From Pelomyxa schiedti (Eukaryota; Protista; Evosea), in the NCBI GenBank assembly GCA_020536535.1, contig JAHLWZ010000171.1, forward strand, positions 156,288-220,287: a DNA stretch of 64,000 bases. The letters are read 5' to 3'. The position numbers and the translations under genes were made by a program. Below are positions 18,554 through 40,800 of the stretch, one piece after another. The notes beneath the pieces were generated by a model that saw only the letters and a list, made by a program, of their open reading frames with translations, was not told where the DNA came from and searched no databases. Position 1 is the first letter of the stretch; each line of letters starts with the position of its first letter.

Positions 18554-19200
18554 ATGTTGTGGACTGTGATGGTTGCATTGGGGTGCACGGAGGCCGTAAT
18601 GGTGACTGCAATTTTGGCGCCTCTGCCGATCAAATTCCGGGCGTGGTGCGTGAACTCATTCGCTAGGGTTTGCAACCAGAAGTACATCAAGTACGTACGT
18701 GTGGCCAAGCTTTGCTTGTGAATTCTAATTAAAAGACATAATTTTGTTTTTGCTGCAACTAACACAATAAACATCACCACAATTACTTGACAAACAGATG
18801 GGCTCTGGCTACTATTGGTGTGGTTGTGTTCCTGTCATTCATTGAGTCTATTCGTAAAGCGCAGCAAGTGTACACTGAACTGCACTCAAGTCACGAAAAA
18901 GCCCATATGGCCACTGTAACTTATAATCTGTGAGTATCTCGCTTTTTCCCTCCATTTAGTTTATTTTTTGACCGTTCAATTAGGTTGTTTATGTCACAGA
19001 GAAACGAGGTTGTTTTTACCCCCTTTTTACTAGTTTCCTCAAAATCCAATAGTACATCAGTGGAGCGACATTGTTTTTGTTCTACGTTCTGTGGCGGCTG
19101 AGCTATTTCTGCTCCACAATAGAAAAAAACTACAACACCAAAAAACAATAAACCACAGAACTCCATCATCGACAAAACATAAGTTACAGAACATGTGACC
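18554..19200 (+). CDS. BAP29/BAP31-family ER membrane protein; 3' end approximate
   Basis: MLWTVMVALGCTEAVMVTAILAPLP, TM2 LATIGVVVFLSFIESIRK, LFMSQRN..YISGATLFL (family motif FRAQRNxYISG). Confidence 0.75.
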
Positions 19201-19315
19201 TAGGGAGAGTCTCCCCCCCCTCGAGGGTGCTCAGGGATCTACTACTTAATGGCAAATAAGAAATTTCGCTTTTTTTTAATTTTTTTTTTTTTCTTTTCAG
19301 TCATACACTAAGAAA

Positions 19316-20300
19316 ATGCTAGTCTTCGTGAAGGGAGTGTCGGGGGAGACGATGACATTTCAGGTCAGCCCCATGCAGACCGTGTCGTCGTTCAAGTGCA
19401 TGCTAGAGTACAAATTGGGTCGGCAACAGCCCCCACATCTTTCGACTAGAGTCACTCTGACTTTTTTTTTTTTTTTATTACTCCACCAGGCACGTTGTTG
19501 GGAAATGAGAGACTTCTGTTTGGTGGTAAGCAACTTGTGGACGAAGCTACGTTGGCTGACTATGATGTGAGAAATGAGTCCACTATACATTTGACCCTCT
19601 CTCTACTTGGTGGACTGGTACTTTGTTTATTTTTTTTGTATTTATTTTTCCTGGTTTTTTTTTTAATGGTCGTTAGTTGCCTTCATCCCTGTTAAGAACA
19701 GCCGTGGGGCATCAAATGGTGATTCCCTCTCTCCTTCAAGCACTTGGTTTTACATTTTTACATATATATTATCTTCCAGCTTGTTGAACTTAAAAATGGT
19801 GAAACTTACAATGGACAACTTGTGAGCTGTGATGCATGGATGAATATCATACTGCGTAAAGTTACTTGCACATCCAGAGATTGTGAAAAGTTCTGGAGAA
19901 TCACGCATTGCTACATCAAAGGCACCACAGTAAAATATCTGAACTTAGAAGAAGAGGTTCTGGAGAAAGTTGAAGCACCAGGTAAAAGACACATCACACA
20001 ACCGCGCCCAACAACACAAAAAGCCCCAAATATCCTACATACCTCCCTCCCTCCCTACCTACCTACCCACAATCGACACCAAATAACTTTACCACAGCAG
20101 CTCCAGCCACACCCGAGGAAATGACCGAAGCCGCGCCGCCCCCAACCACCGGCGGCCGCGGAGGAGGCAGAGGCCGAGGCAGAGGCAAAAGCGGACCCCC
20201 AGGGGGCATGGGCCCAGGGGGCCGCGGGGGAGGCGGCTCGGGGGGTGCTGGTGCTGGGCCAGGTGGAAGGGGAAGGGGCCGCCAACGCCGCAACACTTGA
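19316..20300 (+). CDS. LSM4: Ubiquitin/FUBI-like domain (76 aa, ending LLGG) fused to LSm4 with an RGG tail
   Basis: Exons 19316-19418, 19490-19617, 19677-19718, 19780-~19981 and ~20107-20300 splice in frame: [10 protein letters not shown]...LFGGKQL...[12 protein letters not shown]|[38 protein letters not shown]...[12 protein letters not shown]. Confidence 0.9.
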
Positions 20301-20570
20301 AGCTTGGAGCGACGCCCTTGTGTCCTTTGCGTGGCTTTCCTTGCAAACAAACAAATAACCAACCAACCAAACAAACGAACACCATACAACCAAACACACG
20401 AACCAAGAAAACAGACCACCAACAAGAATAAGGCACACCACACACTAAAAAGAAGTAAAGAAAACAGAACTGTTGGAACTGTTTTTTTTTTTAACTTGCT
20501 ACCCTTATGGCTTATTCACCCACACTGTCCCTCCAATCTATTTGAATTAAGTTAGATACAAAAGTTGATT

Positions 20571-22734
20571 TTATGGTATTTGTAAAATACCAGTCAAGTC
20601 ATTGTTGATGTTATCTGTAACGTGGAGTGGTGCAGGAGTACATGCACATAGGTCAACTGGCTTAACTGGTACGCTTACTTTTTTGTGTTGAATCTTTTTT
20701 ACAGCCTTGGATAGAGAAAAAGACCCAAATCGAGGTTTTTCCGCATTGGATGTGCCACACATTGCTTGATAGCGTGCTTGCAGTGCTATTCGTATCATTT
20801 CATGGAAGCTTTCCTCAATGTTTATTCTCAGGCAAGCACTGGACTACATTCTGTTTAGGACAAGATGGAAAAAGATGAATACCTCAAAGAAAGGACATCG
20901 CATTTCCTTGGCTAATGCTTTACCCTCTTCTGTGGAGACTTTCCTTTCTGCTACGAGGTCACATTTTCCTCCAATTAAAATTTTTGGGTAATCTATTGTG
21001 TCTTTCAATCTGATGATCTGATCGTGAAACCGTGGCACTTCACAAAACGAATCCCGGGAAGTGGTGGCGTACCTTATAGCAAATAAATAAGTCATGGGCA
21101 AAGGTGCGCCAAACCCTAGAGAAAAAACTTCATAGCTTTTCATGTATCTTTGTAAAGGGGAGAATAGAGGAAATGAAATTGAATAAAACAAAGCCAAGAG
21201 AGTTACTGTTCTCTCATAGCGGAGTACCTTGGATTGGTTAAGGGACAAGAAAATATGGATAGAATTACTCTTCTTGCCCAGCTATTTGTTTCATGAGATA
21301 CGAAAATTTAATGAGGAAGTTCAACCTGTATCAAGAATGTCACACATTACAGTTATGCCATCGACAGTGACCTGCTTCCTATAGGACTACAAATGTTATC
21401 TTTTTTCACAAATTAGTGGCGGATACGTCTTCAATAGTGGGGTCATATTCAGTAATAAAGTGACTCTGCACTAAACCATAAGTGACAATAAAACCCATGG
21501 TAACAAAGTGCAGACCTGAACAAACTGAATTATGGTGGCTGATTTCGTTCCAATTCCACCACCACCAACACAAGCTATCTTTATATCGTCTCTGATACAA
21601 AATTTGAAAGGAGGCACCTGAAAAACAGCAGAAAGTTTCTGCAGAGCAGTTTCGCCAACTACATTATCCCGAATGTTGAGTGAAGCTGGCCTGTGACCTT
21701 CTGATATCGTCGCCAATGTGAGGCAACCAGGCTCTGAAATGTTACACTTTCCAAGGGACAGAACCATTAGAGGTGGTCTCCTACATAGGGCTTGGCTCAA
21801 GTAGGACATGCTGGAATCACCAATTGGATTTTTATCAAGAATAAGCTCTTGTAGGGCAACGTTGGAAATCAAACCACTAGAAAGAATTTGTATGCATTTC
21901 TCATCCAGACCGCACCGGGGCAGCGCTAGAACTCGAAGAGAAGTACTCACTGAGATATGTGGTGCCATCTCAGCCATTGCCCGTGCTGATATTTCAGTCC
22001 TGGACTCAAACTCTTCAAGGTGCTGTAAGTGTGTAGAAAGTGCCTCTGCTTCCTCAACTTTCATAGCAGCTTTCGGAAGACGGTCAGGCGGTTGGACCAC
22101 AAGTACACCAAGCAAATGGCCACACATTGATGATATCCCAGACTTGAAATTGGCATCGCCAGTTGTCACAGACACATTGCGGAGGACTGACAAGTGGCAG
22201 CCAAATGGCGACCTGCCAATCTTGCATTGGTTACAGTGGCCACAATGGCGCTCACCACTCTGGTGGTGCCTATCACCCGCTGCGCAGAGTTCCCCAACGT
22301 GCCTGCAGAGCAAGCTCATAGATACAGGACCAAACGCGTGGCAGCTCCAGTAATATCTAGGTTCGTAAGAGATTGTCCGCAGGTTCCCGAGTAGCCCCCG
22401 AAGTTGGACATATCCGGGTGCCCCATGAATCCCCAAAAGCATAGACAATGAAGGGACGCTGCCAAGATCAACATGTCAAACTAAACTACTGGGGGGAAAA
22501 AGACGAAACAAAAAGGGGGGGGGTGGAGGTCCTCAACTGTACGGAACCTGCGTGGTCCAAGACTAGGTGGTACGAGGGGCCCCCGTTGGTGTTGTCAACG
22601 TGTGCTGCCACGTTGTCGAACAGATCAGATGCAGCTCGCACCAAATCAGTGTTGCATGGGTCGTCCTCCGTCAATGACTGGCCGCACCTCGCTGCCTCCA
22701 GAAGGCGGTCGCTGTGGCCAGGTCCAAAGTACAT
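20571..22734 (-). CDS. Ribonuclease-inhibitor-type LRR protein fused to a Ras-family GTPase domain; 5' exons uncertain
   Basis: LRRs LRVLALPRCGL, LQELILDKNPIGD, LMVLSLGKCNIS run in one ORF into KIACVGGGGIGTKS. Later exons give YDPTIEDSYRKQ, ILDTAGQEEY, LIGGKCDL, FFE. Confidence 0.85.
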
Positions 22735-24009: not shown

Positions 24010-25603
24010 ATGGGCATTACCTTCACCAAGGCACCTGCGTTGTCGCGCGACAAAGTTGTCCCGTGCCTGGCACGATCCGGCATTTTATTTGACACATGCC
24101 TCAGATCGCAGCCCACGCCACACGATGTAACAAATTCTGACGGACCAAGACCCGTACGTGCGGCGACTACTCACACTGCCACTACAGCGGTTACAGTTAC
24201 GGCTAAGGGAGGAGATGGGCGTACTAGGAGTGCAGATCTGGTAGATCCGTTGGCAAGGTTGCCCCCGAATCTGTTGGCTGCGCACCTTGGTGCAAGGGAT
24301 ATTATTTTGCTGCAGCGCGTGTGTCGTGGCTGGAAGTTGGCGTTGACGTCCGAGTCAGTTTGGGAGCCACTGTTGTCGAAACTGGTGTGTAGTGCTTGAA
24401 TAAAGACTTGGGGACTGATCCACGCCCATTTCCGGTTGCAATTGTCCGCTTCAACTTGTTTTACTTCAGATACCTGTGCACCTTGACTTGAGGAGTAGGA
24501 TCACGGCCAAGTTGGTGAGTGAAGGGGTTGCTGCAAGGTCATATTCCGTATTTGTTGCCCTTCTGCAAAAATTTACTATTGCAGGCACCGTTGAAGACTT
24601 TTTGACGGTACCATCCTTTTCTTCCGTTTTTTTCTCCTAAAATATTAAAGTGGGGTTCATTTACAGAAGAAGAGAGTGCACTTCTGCTTTACAAGGTCAT
24701 GGCACTTGATCGCACTGAGCTTATGAAAGTACTGTATCAAAAGCTAGAGATACTGCCTTTATTCCTCTCGCACCTGGACTTGCGGTAGGAGGATATTTCA
24801 GAAATTCCACTAATTTTCTTGTGATTCTAGAGGACTCACTATTATCGAGGCACAACAGGCACTCTACAACATTGTAAAACCACTTCATTATTTTGACGCA
24901 GCAGAACTTCTGTCATTCTTGGCCCAAGAGTATGTACACCAAAATGAAGTGGATCCTGGCCAGTGTCGATCCCTTTTGGATTCAGCAGGTTAGGCACCTG
25001 AATCCAAGTACAAACTAATGCTAGAAAAATTTACACCCTTTAGATCTTCCTTCAGCTCGTATTGGAGAGTTAATTTTTGAAAGCCTTAATTCTGATCGGA
25101 CCGAACTGGCATCCTACTTGCTAAAGAGAAATCCAAAAGAACGCTGCGAAGCTTACAGTCACGCATTTTGTTTTAAGGGCTTGAATTTTGTTGCTGGTAT
25201 TGGTGCCTTTTTGGCACCAGTACAAATACCTGAGGAATCACAGGTTTCTTATCCTCCTGGCAGTGCAGTATAACAATACCTCAAGCAAATTGATCGCTTA
25301 TTGTCAGAATTTGCTGTGCGCTTTTGGGAGGCGAATCCTGAATTATTTGAGAATTCTGACTCTGCCTACATGCTGGCTTTTTCTGCGGTAATGCTCGTAG
25401 TGGACATGAAGACGCAGACACCAGCCAGAAGAATGACCCGGCCTCAGTTCACCAAAAACGTTGCTGGTTGTAACAACACCAAGGACTTCTCCGAGAGTCT
25501 TCTCCTTTCTGTCTGGAATGCTTGCGAGCTCACTGCGGAGGCTCAGAAGGCAGCCCGCGTTCTTCAAAAGCGCTCGCTTTGGGGTTCCAAAGGTTCACCG
25601 TGA
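24010..25603 (+). CDS. F-box + Sec7 domain protein (FBXO8-like), N-terminal Met-Gly
   Basis: F-box LARLPPNLL..LQRVCRGWK. Sec7 AFLAPVQIPEESQQIDRLLSEFAVRF (glutamate finger retained once a 42-nt intron is removed) and SDSAYMLAFSAVML. Confidence 0.8.
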
Positions 25604-25726
25604 CATCTGATGACAATCGCCCAAACCCAGCTCAGCTCCATCAAACAAGCCGTAGACTCTTCTTTGTTTTGAGGTTTTTTCGTGCCATTCTCTTTTAAAC
25701 TCTCTTCAACGAACATAACAAAAAAA

Positions 25727-27305
25727 ATGGCAGCGAAAATACTGGTTGTCAACGACGACGGGATTGATGCCCCGGGGTTACAAGTTCTGCTTGAGGTCCT
25801 CTCACGGCACCGTCCCCACTACTCGTGCATGGTATACCTCTCATTCTTTTAGCCAGTGAAGCCAACAACCAATTTTTTTTTTTCCTCCCAACCGACTCGT
25901 TTGTTTTCTTTGCACGACACACGTTGTGCGGCCTTTATCGAATGTCAAAAATGACAAACGACAGGTAGCAGCACCCAAAAACAACCAGTCCGCCGTAAGC
26001 CACCGCATCATGCTGCGCGGCGACGTCCGCGTGTCGCGGCACACGATGCCCCGCACGCCCGGCGTGCCCGCCGTCCGCGTCGACGCGTGCCCCGCCGACT
26101 GCGTCCGCGTCGGCCTGCATGTCTTCTTCGGCCACAGCGCCAAGCCCCCGCGCCCTTCGTCGACGCCGGTGCCGTCCTCGTCGCCTCCTCCGCCTTCGGT
26201 TTCTCCCGGGCCAAATTCAAATGCAATTGCAAGTTCCACGTCGACTTCTGAATGCAACTGCGGCGGCAATGTAAGTAGGAGTGGCAGTAATGGTGACATT
26301 ACACAACTGTTGTATCCGAAGCCAAAGTCTATGGCTGATAGACCTGTCATTGGGAGGGAGGTTCATGTGTCGAACTGTGCCACGTCGGGGAGCACCCCTT
26401 TGATTCCGACTCCAAGCTCTCCCATTGTGACCCACTTTGGCAGGGACTGTGACCATGATTGTGGTGGGGATGGCAGAGGACTGATAATGCCTCCAAACAC
26501 ACCCACTTTCGCCCACACGATGATGTTCTCTTCTTCCACTCCGCCACCCAATGAAGAGCTCTCCCTCCTCCCTCTGCAACAGTACATGCAAAATAACTGG
26601 CCGGCTGAGGGACTGCCGGATTTGATCATATCTGGTGTAAACCATGGGAGCAATGATGGCTTGAATGCAGTATACTCTGGAACTGTCGCGGCAGCCCTGG
26701 AGGGAGCCTTGCAAGGAATCCCAAGCTTGGCCGTATCCATTGATTTACCGACTTATGATGTAGGTGGACATCTATGTAACTCTCATAAAAACTTATCCTT
26801 CCTTTTACACTTGGGCAGAAACCAGTGTTGGAGTCTGAAATTCCCTTCGCCGAGGCTGTAGAGTATATTTTACCACTTATCGACCTGTGCATAAGAGAGC
26901 GGATGCCACGATTGCATATTTTGGCCGTAAATCTTCCTTACATTGAGACCGGGAAGCCCTACACACCGAAAGGCTTCCTCCTCACGCAACAGACCCACAC
27001 CACCCTGAACCCCATCTTCAAAGAAGGTTCTCCCAATTCCCATGAAGTTACGCGCAACTCACAACCTTCATTTCGGGCGTGCAGGGCAACAACTTCCAGA
27101 GCAAGTCGGAGAAGAAGTGGCCCTGACCATCGACAAGAGCCAGTTCAACATCATATCCGTGCCGTCCCAGAGTGACACGGCTGCCATACTCAATTCGTGG
27201 GTTTCTGTTTGCCCCCTGCGCGCCGACTACGGGGCCCTATGCATAACCTCTACCTCTGCCCCATCCTGGCCCACCCTGCAGACCTGGCCAATCTTCTCCC
27301 CCTGA
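25727..27305 (+). CDS. surE: SurE-family 5'/3'-nucleotidase with a large low-complexity insertion
   Basis: [65 protein letters not shown]. Confidence 0.9.
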
Positions 27306-38820: not shown

Positions 38821-40656
38821 TTATTGGAGTGTTTCAGTCCAACAATATAAGTCATAAGGGGGAAAAAAGCATAACATTAAATTTTTTTTGTTCTTTGTCT
38901 TTTTTTTGTTTAACACAAGAAATTGGGGTTTGGAAAAGTGACCAGCAGCCAATAAAACCAGAAGAGCAGCGAACAAGAACGAGGGGGTTGACAATTGGCT
39001 GCCTCTGCTCAGACTGATGCTGGTTGGTTCAGAAGACTCTTCCTCGGAAGATTCCTCTTCAGACTCTGATTCAGATTCTGATTCTGATTCGGACTCGGAC
39101 TCGGACTCGGACTCGGACTCGGACTCGCTCTCAGACTCCGACTCGGACTGTGACCTCGATGTGGACCGTGAGGTAGAGCGGGACGTGGAGGTTGATTCGG
39201 AATCTGAGGTGGATCTGGAAGTTGAGGTGGATCTGGAAGTTGAAGTGGATCTGGAGTTCGAGGTTGACGTGGAGCGTGAAACAGAAGTGGAAGTGGAGAG
39301 GGATTCGGATTCCGAAGTGGATTCAGAAGCAGAAGAGGAGATTGACTTGGAAGTGGAGGCGGAGGCGGAGGCGGAGGCGGAGCTCGAAGCAGACGACGAC
39401 AGTGACACCGAGGCCGACTCAGAAGACGAGGACGACAAGGACTCGGAGGACGAGGAGTGGGACGACGAGGATTCTGAGGACGAAGACAGCGACACCGACT
39501 GCGATGACGAAGAGGACAGCGATTCCGAGGAGGAGGAGAAGGAGCCGGACAGCGAAGACGACGACAGAGACACCGACCAGGACTCGGACGAAGAAGACTG
39601 CGGGATGATGATCTCGATCACCTGCAGGGACGACGAGTCCGTGTACTGGGTCGTCGGCTGCGAGTACAGCGCGCTGCTGGTGTCGTTGACCATCGCGTTC
39701 ACGGTGGCCACGAGCGCGTCGGTGCTGTTGTACACGGTCTCGTTGAGCCCCACCTTGTAGTCGACCTTGACGATCTGGGATGGGCCCCCTCTGGGGCGCG
39801 GCGAGGGCGCGGGAGCCGGGCCCGTGCACGCGCTGTCGTCGATGGTCATGTTGACTACGCTTACGAGGTCGGGCGAGATACCAAGTGCAGCTGCTATATC
39901 TGCCTCGAAGGAGGAAGAGTAGTCGGAAGGCAGTGGGTCACACCCTGTGTGGGGACAGTGTCAGTTAAGTTTCAATGGTGATGGCTGGTGGTGGTGGTGG
40001 GGGGGAGGAGGGGTGCGCTGTGACATGGGATATAGAAGAAAAAGGCCTGTACCTGGAAGTACATCCATGGAGAACACCACAGTAGGAACACAAGAGAAGC
40101 CGTCTCCGCCGCATACGGCGCACGTGTCGAAGACCAGCCCGGAATACGGGACGCCGTCGCACCCGGCGCAGATGTTGGCGCCCCCGCAGACGCCGCACGG
40201 GTCGTACTTGTAGCCGGACCAGTACACGCCGTCGCAGCCAAGGCATTGATTCAGCCCGCCGCACACGCCGCAGGCGTCGTACACCTGGCCGCCCCACGCC
40301 TTCCCAGTGCAGTCCGCGCAGACGTCGGAGCCCCCGCACACGCCGCAGGCGTCGTACTTCTTGCCGGACCACGGTGTGCCGTCGCAGCCGATGCAGTCGT
40401 TGGTGCCGTTGCACGTGCCGCAGATGTCGTACACCTTGCCGCCCCACGCCGTCCCGGTGCAGTCCACGCAGACGTCGGAGCCCCCGCACACGCCGCAGTC
40501 GTCGTACGCGACCCCTGACCACGGTGTGCCGTCGCACCCGACGCACTCGTTGGTGCCGGCCCACTCGCCGCACGTGTCGTACTGGGCGTAAGACCCCGCC
40601 ACGAGGACAACGAGAACAAGCACTGAGGCCGTAAAGTTAGTCCGCCACGGTAACAT
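38821..40656 (-). CDS. Cell-surface protein: signal peptide, seven 25-aa Cys-rich DxCGVCGG repeats, SEA-like module, Ser/Glu/Thr stalk, hydrophobic C-terminal anchor (GPI or TM)
   Basis: VLVLVVLVAGSYA signal; GCDG..WSG..YDxCGVCGG units; poly-Ser/SE/ST stalk; FLFAALLVLLAAG. Confidence 0.8.
39055..39150. repeat. Coding hexamer microsatellite (GACTCG)n/(GATTCT)n encoding an SE repeat
   Basis: Directly visible tandem hexamers. Confidence 0.9.
40100..40580 (-). repeat. Coding tandem repeat: 75-nt units arranged as a 150-nt AB-AB duplication
   Basis: gcagacgtcggagcccccgcacacgccgcag recurs 150 nt apart (~40318 and ~40468). Confidence 0.85.
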
Positions 40657-40800
40657 TTTTTTTTCCAAATTAACGGTAGCCGTTTTCTTCCTTGTCGTTC
40701 TGAAAAACTGATAATTCCGTTCGCTTGATGTCATCCGAAAAAAAATCAAGAGAATATGTTCTAACCAAAAAAAGGGAGTGGGGGAATCTCTCACTGTGTG

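What the first reader, a model, noticed from the sequence alone, without database searches (positions are those of the whole stretch)
19316..20300. Ubiquitin/FUBI-like domain fused to LSm4: a candidate new ubiquitin-fusion precursor
Seen: splicing gives a domain of exactly 76 aa that aligns with ubiquitin without gaps ([36 protein letters not shown]). It continues in frame into a complete LSm4 ([26 protein letters not shown].., RGG tail). LSm4 has no Met of its own: CTG sits at that position, followed by a phase-0 intron. Known: cleavable ubiquitin-fold fusions include eL40, eS31, FUBI-eS30 (LLGG/MLGG ends) and the splicing factor Sde2; I know of none for an LSm protein. Inference: a deubiquitinase would cleave after GG and release LSm4 with N-terminal Leu, a type-2 N-degron residue. 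The domain could act as a folding chaperone or a gate for U6 snRNP/P-body LSm ring assembly, and might also yield a free conjugatable modifier.
Basis: partly seen in the sequence, partly recalled or inferred. Interest (0 to 1): 0.88.

Follow-up and report, generated by a model that had tools for sequence, protein, structure and literature searches.

The report
Ubiquitin-like domain fused to LSm4
In the anaerobic amoeba Pelomyxa schiedti the RNA-processing protein LSm4 is encoded as the tail of a 76-residue ubiquitin-like domain ending in Gly-Gly. Mastigamoeba balamuthi has the same arrangement, so this is probably a new example of the known "ubiquitin-fusion precursor" type of gene, although cleavage has not been shown.

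Summary
Five GT-AG exons (19316-20300, + strand) give a 225-aa protein. It consists of a 76-aa ubiquitin-like domain ending LLGG, then Leu (CTG where LSm4 normally has ATG), then a complete LSm4 with an RGG tail.

- **Public annotation.** The model is identical to the GenBank protein "Ribonucleoprotein LSM domain [Pelomyxa schiedti]". Pfam finds ubiquitin (2e-15) and LSM (1e-15).
- **Conservation.** Mastigamoeba balamuthi encodes the same architecture, with a 76-aa Ubl ending VLGG joined directly to MLPLSLL.
- **Ubl divergence.** The two Ubls are only 38% identical to each other and 41-43% to ubiquitin, yet both keep the length, the core and Gly75-Gly76.
- **Structure.** AlphaFold gives two confident, independent domains joined by a flexible LLGG tail.
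- **Best reading.** This is a lineage-specific (Archamoebae) cleavable Ubl-LSm4 precursor, analogous to Ub-eL40, Ub-eS31, FUBI-eS30 and Sde2. Cleavage is inferred, not shown.

The Ubl is ubiquitin-derived and is not FUBI. The N-terminal Leu degron is Pelomyxa-specific, because Mastigamoeba keeps Met.

A Mastigella transcript ORF shows LSm4 without the Ubl, which is ambiguous. I found no paper describing the fusion. It is a new member of a known kind, of moderate interest.

The parts
19152..19315 (+). Short upstream region between the stop of the Bap31-like gene (19151) and the ATG. It holds a C-run, a long T-tract and a CAG at 19298-19300, plus an in-frame TAA at 19277-19279.
   Evidence: The promoter or 5'UTR role is inferred only.
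19316..19418 (+). Exon 1: start codon and Ubl residues 1-34, plus the first base of Gly35.
   Evidence: Pfam ubiquitin.
19419..19489 (+). Intron 1 (71 nt, GT-AG, phase 1). If retained, a stop follows at codon 85.
19490..19617 (+). Exon 2: Ubl residues 35-76 ending LSLLGG (Gly-Gly codons 19609-19614), plus Leu77 (CTG 19615-19617) at the position of the LSm4 initiator Met.
19618..19676 (+). Intron 2 (59 nt, GT-AG, phase 0, 66% T) between the Ubl and LSm4 parts. Its ATG at 19666 is out of frame. If retained, it adds about 26 hydrophobic residues after GG and then a stop.
19677..19718 (+). Exon 3: LSm4 N-terminal helix, [14 protein letters not shown].
19719..19779 (+). Intron 3 (61 nt, GT-AG, phase 0).
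19780..19981 (+). Exon 4: Sm fold of LSm4 ([12 protein letters not shown] ... EAP).
19982..20097 (+). Intron 4 (116 nt, GT-AG, phase 1).
20098..20300 (+). Exon 5: Pro/Ala linker and disordered RGG-rich tail, with stop TGA at 20298-20300.

Best explanation
One gene of Pelomyxa schiedti encodes a precursor. A divergent, ubiquitin-derived 76-residue beta-grasp domain is translated first and runs without any linker into LSm4. LSm4 is the subunit of the LSm2-8 (U6 snRNA) and LSm1-7 (mRNA decay) rings.

Shown: the fused frame; LSm4's dependence on the Ubl start codon; conservation of the architecture and of the Gly-Gly junction in Mastigamoeba balamuthi; and two independently folding domains joined by a flexible tail.

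Inferred: a deubiquitinase cuts after Gly76, as for Ub-eL40, Ub-eS31, FUBI-eS30 and Sde2. This would release LSm4 with its canonical un-extended N-terminus (Leu-Leu-Pro in Pelomyxa, Met-Leu-Pro in Mastigamoeba) and a free Ubl. The Ubl would most likely act in cis, as a transient co-translational helper or a dosage or assembly-timing device for a subunit with an aggregation-prone RGG tail. It is less likely to act as a widely used modifier, because its surface is poorly conserved.
For: - The gene model and its identity to the deposited protein.
- No in-frame ATG for LSm4, with CTG at the Met position.
- Retention of intron 2 would add hydrophobic junk rather than a stop right after GG.
- Pfam finds ubiquitin and LSM, and the Ubl aligns to ubiquitin without gaps.
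- M. balamuthi P0189 has a 76-aa Ubl ending VLGG followed directly by MLPLSLL.
- The two Ubls are 29/76 identical to each other and 33/76 and 31/76 to ubiquitin. Both keep G75, G76, F4, K6, R42 and K48, and only P. schiedti keeps L71 and L73 (Mastigamoeba has G71 and V73). The LSm parts are 50/74 identical.
- In the AF2 model, pLDDT is above 90 for residues 1-71 and about 87-94 for the LSm fold. It is below 50 at residues 74-76, and pTM is 0.44, so no fixed packing between the domains is predicted.
- Foldseek matches LSm4 and ubiquitin at TM about 0.9.
- Most LSm4 orthologues aligned here start exactly at MLPLSLL, which suggests the free N-terminus is the functional state.
- The diglycine requirement for FUBI-eS30 processing comes from PMC8354635.
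Against: - There is no protein-level or transcript-level evidence in hand. I could not inspect RNA-seq reads across the 19617/19677 junction, and no Logan cDNA contig carries the exact protein.
- Tail residues Arg72 and Arg74, which USPs contact in ubiquitin (PMC10611586), are Ser and Leu in Pelomyxa. Cleavage by a generic DUB is therefore not guaranteed.
- The closest LSm4-only relative, a Mastigella eilhardi transcript ORF (P0190), begins MAVRVGMVPSSLL and has no Ubl. The fusion may have been lost there, or the function may be dispensable.
- The M. balamuthi DNA could not be examined.
Confidence: 0.6

Rival explanations
1. The Ubl is never removed. It is an integral N-terminal UBL domain of LSm4, as in Rad23, parkin or BAG-type UBL-domain proteins. 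It would recruit partners such as the proteasome or ubiquitin-binding proteins, or tune P-body or U6 snRNP assembly.
For: The fusion is conserved in two genera. Hydrophobic residues persist at positions 44 and 70 (L/A and T/L). Cleavage has not been shown.
Against: Integral UBL domains usually lack a terminal Gly-Gly at position 75-76 and are joined by linkers (established knowledge). Here GG is kept in both lineages although 62% of the other positions differ. The junction falls exactly at LSm4 residue 1 with no linker. The tail is predicted to be flexible and exposed. Most LSm4 orthologues aligned here have no N-terminal extension.
Confidence: 0.2
2. After cleavage, the released Ubl is itself a conjugatable modifier and the LSm4 gene is merely its carrier. 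This is compatible with the best explanation but shifts the main function to the Ubl.
For: The GG terminus, K48 and K6 are kept in both species. The beta-grasp fold is intact.
Against: Conjugated modifiers co-evolve with their E1/E2 enzymes and are typically well conserved. This domain is only 38% identical between two archamoebae. Arg72, the ubiquitin E1 determinant (established knowledge), is Ser in Pelomyxa, and residues 8, 44, 68 and 70 vary. No dedicated enzymes are known.
Confidence: 0.1
3. The fusion is an artefact of gene prediction. On this view there are two adjacent genes in a compact genome (a small Ubl gene and LSm4), or LSm4 is mainly made from an internal promoter with non-AUG or Met91 initiation.
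For: Intergenic spacers in this contig are as short as 57 bp, close to the 59 bp of intron 2. The annotation came from Augustus, PASA and EVM, and I could not see gene-specific transcript support. The Mastigella ORF has no Ubl.
Against: There is no stop codon after GG. LSm4 has no in-frame ATG before residue 91, and CTG sits at the Met position. Intron 2 has GT-AG ends and a 66% T tract, and introns 1 and 3 are also T-rich. An independent annotation of another genus gives the same in-frame junction.
Confidence: 0.07

Closest known systems
Ubiquitin-ribosomal protein precursors (Ub-eL40, Ub-eS31/S27a)
   Same: An N-terminal 76-aa beta-grasp unit ends in Gly-Gly and is joined with no linker to residue 1 of a small RNA-binding subunit of a large RNP. 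It would be cleaved by DUBs, with ubiquitin acting as a transient in-cis helper (established knowledge; references cited in PMC6332867 and PMC8354635).
   Different: Here the N-terminal unit is not ubiquitin proper (41-43% identity). The partner is an Sm-like ring subunit, not a ribosomal protein. The distribution is Archamoebae only as far as seen.
FUBI-eS30 (FAU)
   Same: A divergent Ubl (FUBI is 36% identical to ubiquitin) with a terminal diglycine is fused to an RNP subunit. [quoted passage not shown]
   Different: FUBI is 74 aa, is fused to eS30 and is restricted to Holozoa. The Pelomyxa domain is 76 aa, aligns to ubiquitin without gaps and is fused to LSm4. It is an analogue, not an orthologue.
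Sde2 (ubiquitin-fold-activated splicing factor)
   Same: Sde2 is a spliceosome-associated protein made with an N-terminal Ubl and processed at a GG motif by DUBs. Its released C-terminal part starts with a destabilising residue (Lys) and is an Arg/N-end-rule substrate (PMC6486553, PMC9508853, PMC13572447). Pelomyxa LSm4 would start with Leu, also destabilising.
   Different: The Ubl and the partner are unrelated to those of Sde2. In Mastigamoeba the residue after GG is Met, so the degron is not conserved.
Lineage-specific ubiquitin fusions of protists (Ub-actin, Ub-P1/P2, Ub-NiSOD, Ub-HMG box in Bigelowiella and Guillardia)
   Same: These are patchy, lineage-restricted N-terminal ubiquitin fusions to varied partners that automated annotation tends to overlook (PMC6332867).
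   Different: No LSm or Sm partner is listed there. Those fusions generally carry near-canonical ubiquitin, whereas this one has diverged strongly.

Membership tests
Ubiquitin family beta-grasp domain (Pfam PF00240) | Sequence match above the curated threshold | tested here: met
   56.5 bits against a cut-off of 25.4, residues 3-73. Gapless 1-76 alignment to ubiquitin.
Ubiquitin family beta-grasp domain (Pfam PF00240) | Beta-grasp fold | tested here: met
   The AF2 model has pLDDT above 90 over residues 1-71 with the b-b-a-b-b order. Foldseek matches ubiquitin chains at TM about 0.9.
Ubiquitin proper | Near-invariant sequence across eukaryotes, including L8, I44, V70, R72 and R74 and the seven lysines | tested here: not met
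   33/76 identical. V8, L44, T70, S72 and L74 replace the canonical residues. K11, K29 and K63 are lost.
FUBI (FAU Ubl) | A 74-aa Ubl fused to ribosomal protein eS30, found in Holozoa | tested here: not met
   The domain is 76 aa, the partner is LSm4 and the organism is an amoebozoan.
LSm4 (U6 snRNA-associated Sm-like protein 4) | Best matches are LSm4 rather than other Sm/LSm paralogues, aligned from residue 1 | tested here: met
   Human LSm4 scores 117.6 bits (E 1.5e-33), aligned 1-80 to 1-80. SmD3 and LSm2 score 44 bits or less. All database neighbours are LSm4.
LSm4 (U6 snRNA-associated Sm-like protein 4) | Sm fold (N-terminal helix plus a five-stranded bent sheet) and a C-terminal RGG-rich tail | tested here: met
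   Helix 80-85 and strands 90-147 have pLDDT of about 87-94. The tail is disordered and RGG-rich.
LSm4 (U6 snRNA-associated Sm-like protein 4) | Incorporation into LSm2-8 and LSm1-7 rings | not testable with these tools
   This needs biochemistry.
Cleavable N-terminal Ub/Ubl fusion precursors | The Ubl ends in Gly-Gly and joins the partner's first residue directly, and the next residue is not Pro | tested here: met
   LLGG followed by L in Pelomyxa and VLGG followed by M in Mastigamoeba.
Cleavable N-terminal Ub/Ubl fusion precursors | The junction is conserved across species while the Ubl surface drifts | tested here: met
   Two genera share the junction, with the Ubls 38% identical and G75-G76 invariant. 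A third taxon, Mastigella, is ambiguous.
Cleavable N-terminal Ub/Ubl fusion precursors | Endoproteolytic cleavage after GG by a deubiquitinase, with the mature partner lacking the Ubl | not testable with these tools
   There are no proteomic or biochemical data. Only the flexible, exposed tail is predicted.
Cleavable N-terminal Ub/Ubl fusion precursors | A single mRNA spans both parts | tested here: inconclusive
   The frame logic and the annotation support it. The annotation pipeline used transcript data, but I could not inspect reads across the junction.

The most novel reading that the evidence does not exclude
Ubl removal is an assembly checkpoint for the LSm rings. Cleavage would expose a destabilising N-terminus (Leu in Pelomyxa, Met-Leu in Mastigamoeba) that is shielded only once LSm4 is built into LSm2-8 or LSm1-7. 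Orphan LSm4 would then be destroyed by the Arg/N-degron pathway. The released Ubl might additionally be a lineage-specific conjugatable modifier. This would be a natural ubiquitin-fusion N-degron device that controls the stoichiometry of an Sm-type ring.
Probability: 0.1. Interest if true: 0.7.

Novelty: new member of a known kind. Interest (0 to 1): 0.42.

Why it matters
Ubiquitin-fusion precursors are best understood for ribosomal proteins. Only a few non-ribosomal cases are known, such as Sde2 and the algal Ub-actin and Ub-NiSOD fusions. An LSm4 fusion kept in two archamoebal genera would extend the idea of a "Ubl as a removable in-cis helper" to the Sm/LSm ring family. It offers a natural system for asking why certain RNP subunits benefit from such a helper. 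It also gives a rare genomic character for Archamoebae phylogeny. It is a curiosity in non-model organisms and does not resolve an open question.

Tried and rejected
1. **Representative search.** The single search of representatives with the full fusion was swamped by polyubiquitins. All 150 listed hits scored above 179 bits. It shows only that no close full-length orthologue outranks them. Hits whose match seemed to extend past residue 77 (P0061, P0113, P0133, P0140) are polyubiquitin artefacts.
2. **Metagenome scan.** The scan with the two Ubls returned 64 Ubl loci. tblastn found no LSm4 coding sequence in any of them.
3. **DNA look-ups.** Look-ups for the Mastigamoeba and Mastigella proteins failed. 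Their intron structure and the sequence upstream of the Mastigella ORF could not be checked.
4. **Mixed alignment.** An alignment of LSm4 with ubiquitin units misplaced the second half of ubiquitin. I discarded it for folding and used A4 instead.
5. **Tree against NEDD8 and FUBI.** I did not build one, because no tool supplied those sequences and I did not type them from memory.
6. **Single or double origin.** The Ubl sequences alone do not settle this. The two share 6 derived residues among the 35 sites where both differ from ubiquitin, and each is slightly closer to ubiquitin than to the other. A single origin is favoured only by the shared partner.
7. **A second LSm4 in P. schiedti.** None appeared. 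The listings are truncated and depend on a word index, so absence is not proven.
8. **Entamoeba.** It could not be assessed.

Full report
**What is in the sequence.** I read 18800-20900 and assembled the exons. Five + strand exons join into a 678-nt reading frame: 19316-19418, 19490-19617, 19677-19718, 19780-19981 and 20098-20300.
- All four introns start GT and end AG, are 59-116 nt long and are G-poor. Introns 1-3 are T-rich, and intron 4 is A/C-rich.
- The 225-aa product starts with a 76-residue domain (MLVFVKG ... LSLLGG).
- It continues with Leu77, encoded by CTG at 19615-19617, the last codon of exon 2.
- It then runs across the phase-0 intron 2 into [14 protein letters not shown] / [12 protein letters not shown] ..., and ends in an RGG-rich tail.
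- The ATG at 19316 is the first start after an in-frame TAA at 19277-19279.
- The only ATG in intron 2 (19666) is out of frame. The first in-frame Met of the LSm4 part is residue 91, beyond the N-terminal helix.
- If intron 2 were retained, the Ubl frame would run on for about 26 hydrophobic residues before a stop. It would not terminate after GG.

**Where it comes from and what is annotated.** A word-indexed protein search with exon 4 returned an identical 225-aa entry, P0001.
- P0001 is the NCBI protein "Ribonucleoprotein LSM domain [Pelomyxa schiedti]", with precomputed Pfam ubiquitin and LSM domains.
- The gene lies on contig JAHLWZ010000171.1 of GCA_020536535.1. The deposited model spans exactly the same range (window coordinate = L001 coordinate + 13315).
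- Its neighbours are a Bap31-like gene ending 164 bp upstream and a Ras/Roc GTPase gene on the other strand.
- Spacers in this contig are 57-284 bp, so the genome is compact.
- The genome paper states that models were made with Augustus and improved with PASA and EVM using single-cell transcriptomes (PMC8887013). I could not see transcript support for this gene specifically.

**Domain identities.**
- Pfam gives ubiquitin at 56.5 bits (residues 3-73) and LSM at 57.2 bits (residues 82-145). Both are far above the curated cut-offs.
- Against solved structures, the N-terminal 76 residues align to ubiquitin 1-76 without a gap.
- The C-terminal part aligns from its first residue to residue 1 of human LSm4 (E 1.5e-33). 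Other Sm/LSm paralogues score far lower, so this is an LSm4 orthologue.
- An AlphaFold2 model built on an 18-sequence alignment gives pLDDT above 90 for Ubl residues 1-71 and about 87-94 for the Sm fold.
- In the same model pLDDT is below 50 for residues 74-76, the RGG tail is disordered and pTM is 0.44. That describes two independent domains on a flexible LLGG tether.
- Foldseek matches LSm4 chains and ubiquitin chains at target-normalised TM of about 0.9.

**Comparative evidence.** Searching with residues 1-150 found one other two-domain protein, P0189 (240 aa). An exact look-up assigns it to Mastigamoeba balamuthi (EukProt EP00727, gene m51a1_g4375).
- P0189 has a 76-residue Ubl (MQIFVKT ... 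GRVLGG) followed immediately by MLPLSLLKTA.
- The junction is therefore the same, but the LSm4 initiator Met is retained.
- The two Ubls share 29/76 residues. They share 33/76 and 31/76 with ubiquitin, while the LSm cores share 50/74.
- Both lineages keep M1, F4, V5, K6, G10, R42, L43, F45, G47, K48, D58, Y59 and G75-G76.
- Positions 8, 44, 68, 70 and 72 drift. Position 74 is changed to Leu in both lineages.
- Position 71 stays Leu only in Pelomyxa (Gly in Mastigamoeba), and position 73 is Leu in Pelomyxa and Val in Mastigamoeba.
- This pattern fits selection for the fold and for the diglycine end, with relaxed selection on ubiquitin's recognition surfaces.
- A profile search (83-263 aa; 4163 LSm4-like hits) listed only these two proteins with both domains among its best 120.
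- The closest LSm4-only relative is a Mastigella eilhardi Trinity ORF (P0190, labelled complete) that begins MAVRVGMVPSSLL.
- By established archamoebal phylogeny, Mastigella is nearer to Pelomyxa than Mastigamoeba is. This could mean secondary loss, an unspliced or alternative transcript, or independent fusions. I could not obtain its nucleotide sequence.
- A metagenome scan seeded with the two Ubls gave 64 Ubl loci, none with LSm4 nearby.

**Most likely mechanism.** The anatomy is that of the classical ubiquitin-fusion precursors: a 76-residue Ubl, a terminal Gly-Gly, no linker, and a partner that starts at its own residue 1.
- In Ub-eL40, Ub-eS31 and FUBI-eS30, deubiquitinases cut after the diglycine. 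Mutating the diglycine blocks the processing of FUBI-eS30 (PMC8354635).
- Most LSm4 orthologues aligned here begin exactly at MLPLSLL, so removal of the Ubl would restore the canonical N-terminus.
- I therefore rate [quoted passage not shown] as the best explanation, at about 0.6.
- Shown: the fused frame, LSm4's dependence on the Ubl start codon, conservation of the junction, and the exposed tail. Inferred: cleavage, the enzyme, and the benefit to the cell.
- A caveat is that ubiquitin's Arg72 and Arg74, which USPs contact (PMC10611586), are Ser and Leu in Pelomyxa. A specialised or tolerant DUB may be required, as USP36 and USP16 are for FUBI.

- The domain is not FUBI-like in the sense of family membership. 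FUBI is 74 aa, fused to eS30 and holozoan. This domain has the length and register of ubiquitin, and the Mastigamoeba copy still starts MQIFVKT.
- The N-terminal Leu, a type-2 destabilising residue, is specific to Pelomyxa, because Mastigamoeba would release Met-Leu-Pro. The ATG-to-CTG change is better read as a consequence of the fusion, once the internal start codon became dispensable, than as its purpose. A role in degrading orphan subunits remains possible. It has a precedent in Lys-SDE2Ct (PMC6486553).
- A role as a free modifier is not excluded but is disfavoured by the low conservation of the Ubl.

**Rivals.**
- An uncleaved integral UBL domain (about 0.2) is disfavoured by the conserved GG, the absence of a linker and the flexible tail.
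- A prediction artefact or an independent LSm4 transcript (about 0.07) is disfavoured by three points: no stop follows GG, LSm4 has no in-frame ATG, and an independent annotation of another genus gives the same in-frame junction.

**Novelty.**
- Full-text searches for LSm4 with ubiquitin-like fusion terms, for ubiquitin fusion proteins with Sm-like, and for Mastigamoeba with LSm4 found nothing relevant.
- The survey of protist ubiquitin fusions lists actin, an F-actin capping protein, P1/P2, NiSOD, HMG-box, RING-finger, membrane proteins and an NBR1-like protein, among other partners. It lists no Sm or LSm partner, and it notes that such fusions are under-reported (PMC6332867).
- The protein is already in public databases with both Pfam domains, named only as LSm.
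- I classify it as a new member of a known kind, of moderate interest.

**Limits.**
- No transcript or protein data were available.
- The single exhaustive representative search was wasted on polyubiquitins.
- Entamoeba and other Archamoebae could not be assessed.
- A second LSM4 gene in P. schiedti was not seen but is not strictly excluded.
- The Ubl sequences alone do not resolve a single against a double origin of the fusion.

Noticed in passing
window 19262-19300: A long T-tract ends in CAG 15 nt before the start codon and looks like a 3' splice site, so there may be a 5'UTR intron. Alternatively it is a T-rich promoter or leader element. An in-frame TAA lies inside it at 19277-19279.
   Followed up: partly
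window 18554-19151 (+): The Bap31-like gene (130 aa in the deposited annotation) ends only 164 bp upstream of the Ubl-LSm4 start. Spacers in this contig are 57-284 bp, showing a very compact gene arrangement.
   Followed up: partly
window 24010-26300 (+) (L001 10695-12985, runs on beyond the locus): The deposited annotation gives a 1402-aa product with Sec7, SurE, acetyltransferase and APH/EcKL-kinase Pfam hits. This is either an unusual multidomain protein or several genes merged into one model.
   Followed up: no
window 39961-40794 (-) and 38821-39849 (-): Tandem 75/150-bp repeats (40153-40582) lie in an ORF for a probably secreted Cys-rich protein with repeated D-x-CGVCGG motifs. Next to it is a very Ser-rich, mucin-like 342-aa ORF containing (TCGGAC)n repeats.
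   Followed up: partly
L053-L058 (e.g. L056:3900-4320): Metagenome contigs encode a Ubl ending LRGG followed directly by MPPRKIRCSFKDCK ..., a Cys/His-rich, zinc-finger-like tail. This is another Ubl fusion with a diglycine junction, unrelated to LSm4.
   Followed up: no
P0190 (Mastigella eilhardi EP01105 transcript ORF): The LSm4 ORF carries six extra residues, MAVRVG, before the canonical Met. They faintly recall the start (MxVxV) and end (RV.G) of the Ubl. They could be a relic of a lost Ubl, a translated leader or chance.
   Followed up: partly
window 19316-20300: GC3 differs among the three parts of the gene: 0.61 in the Ubl, 0.41 in the LSm core and 0.57 in the tail. Exon 5 is only 5% T. 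The composition is heterogeneous within one gene.
   Followed up: no
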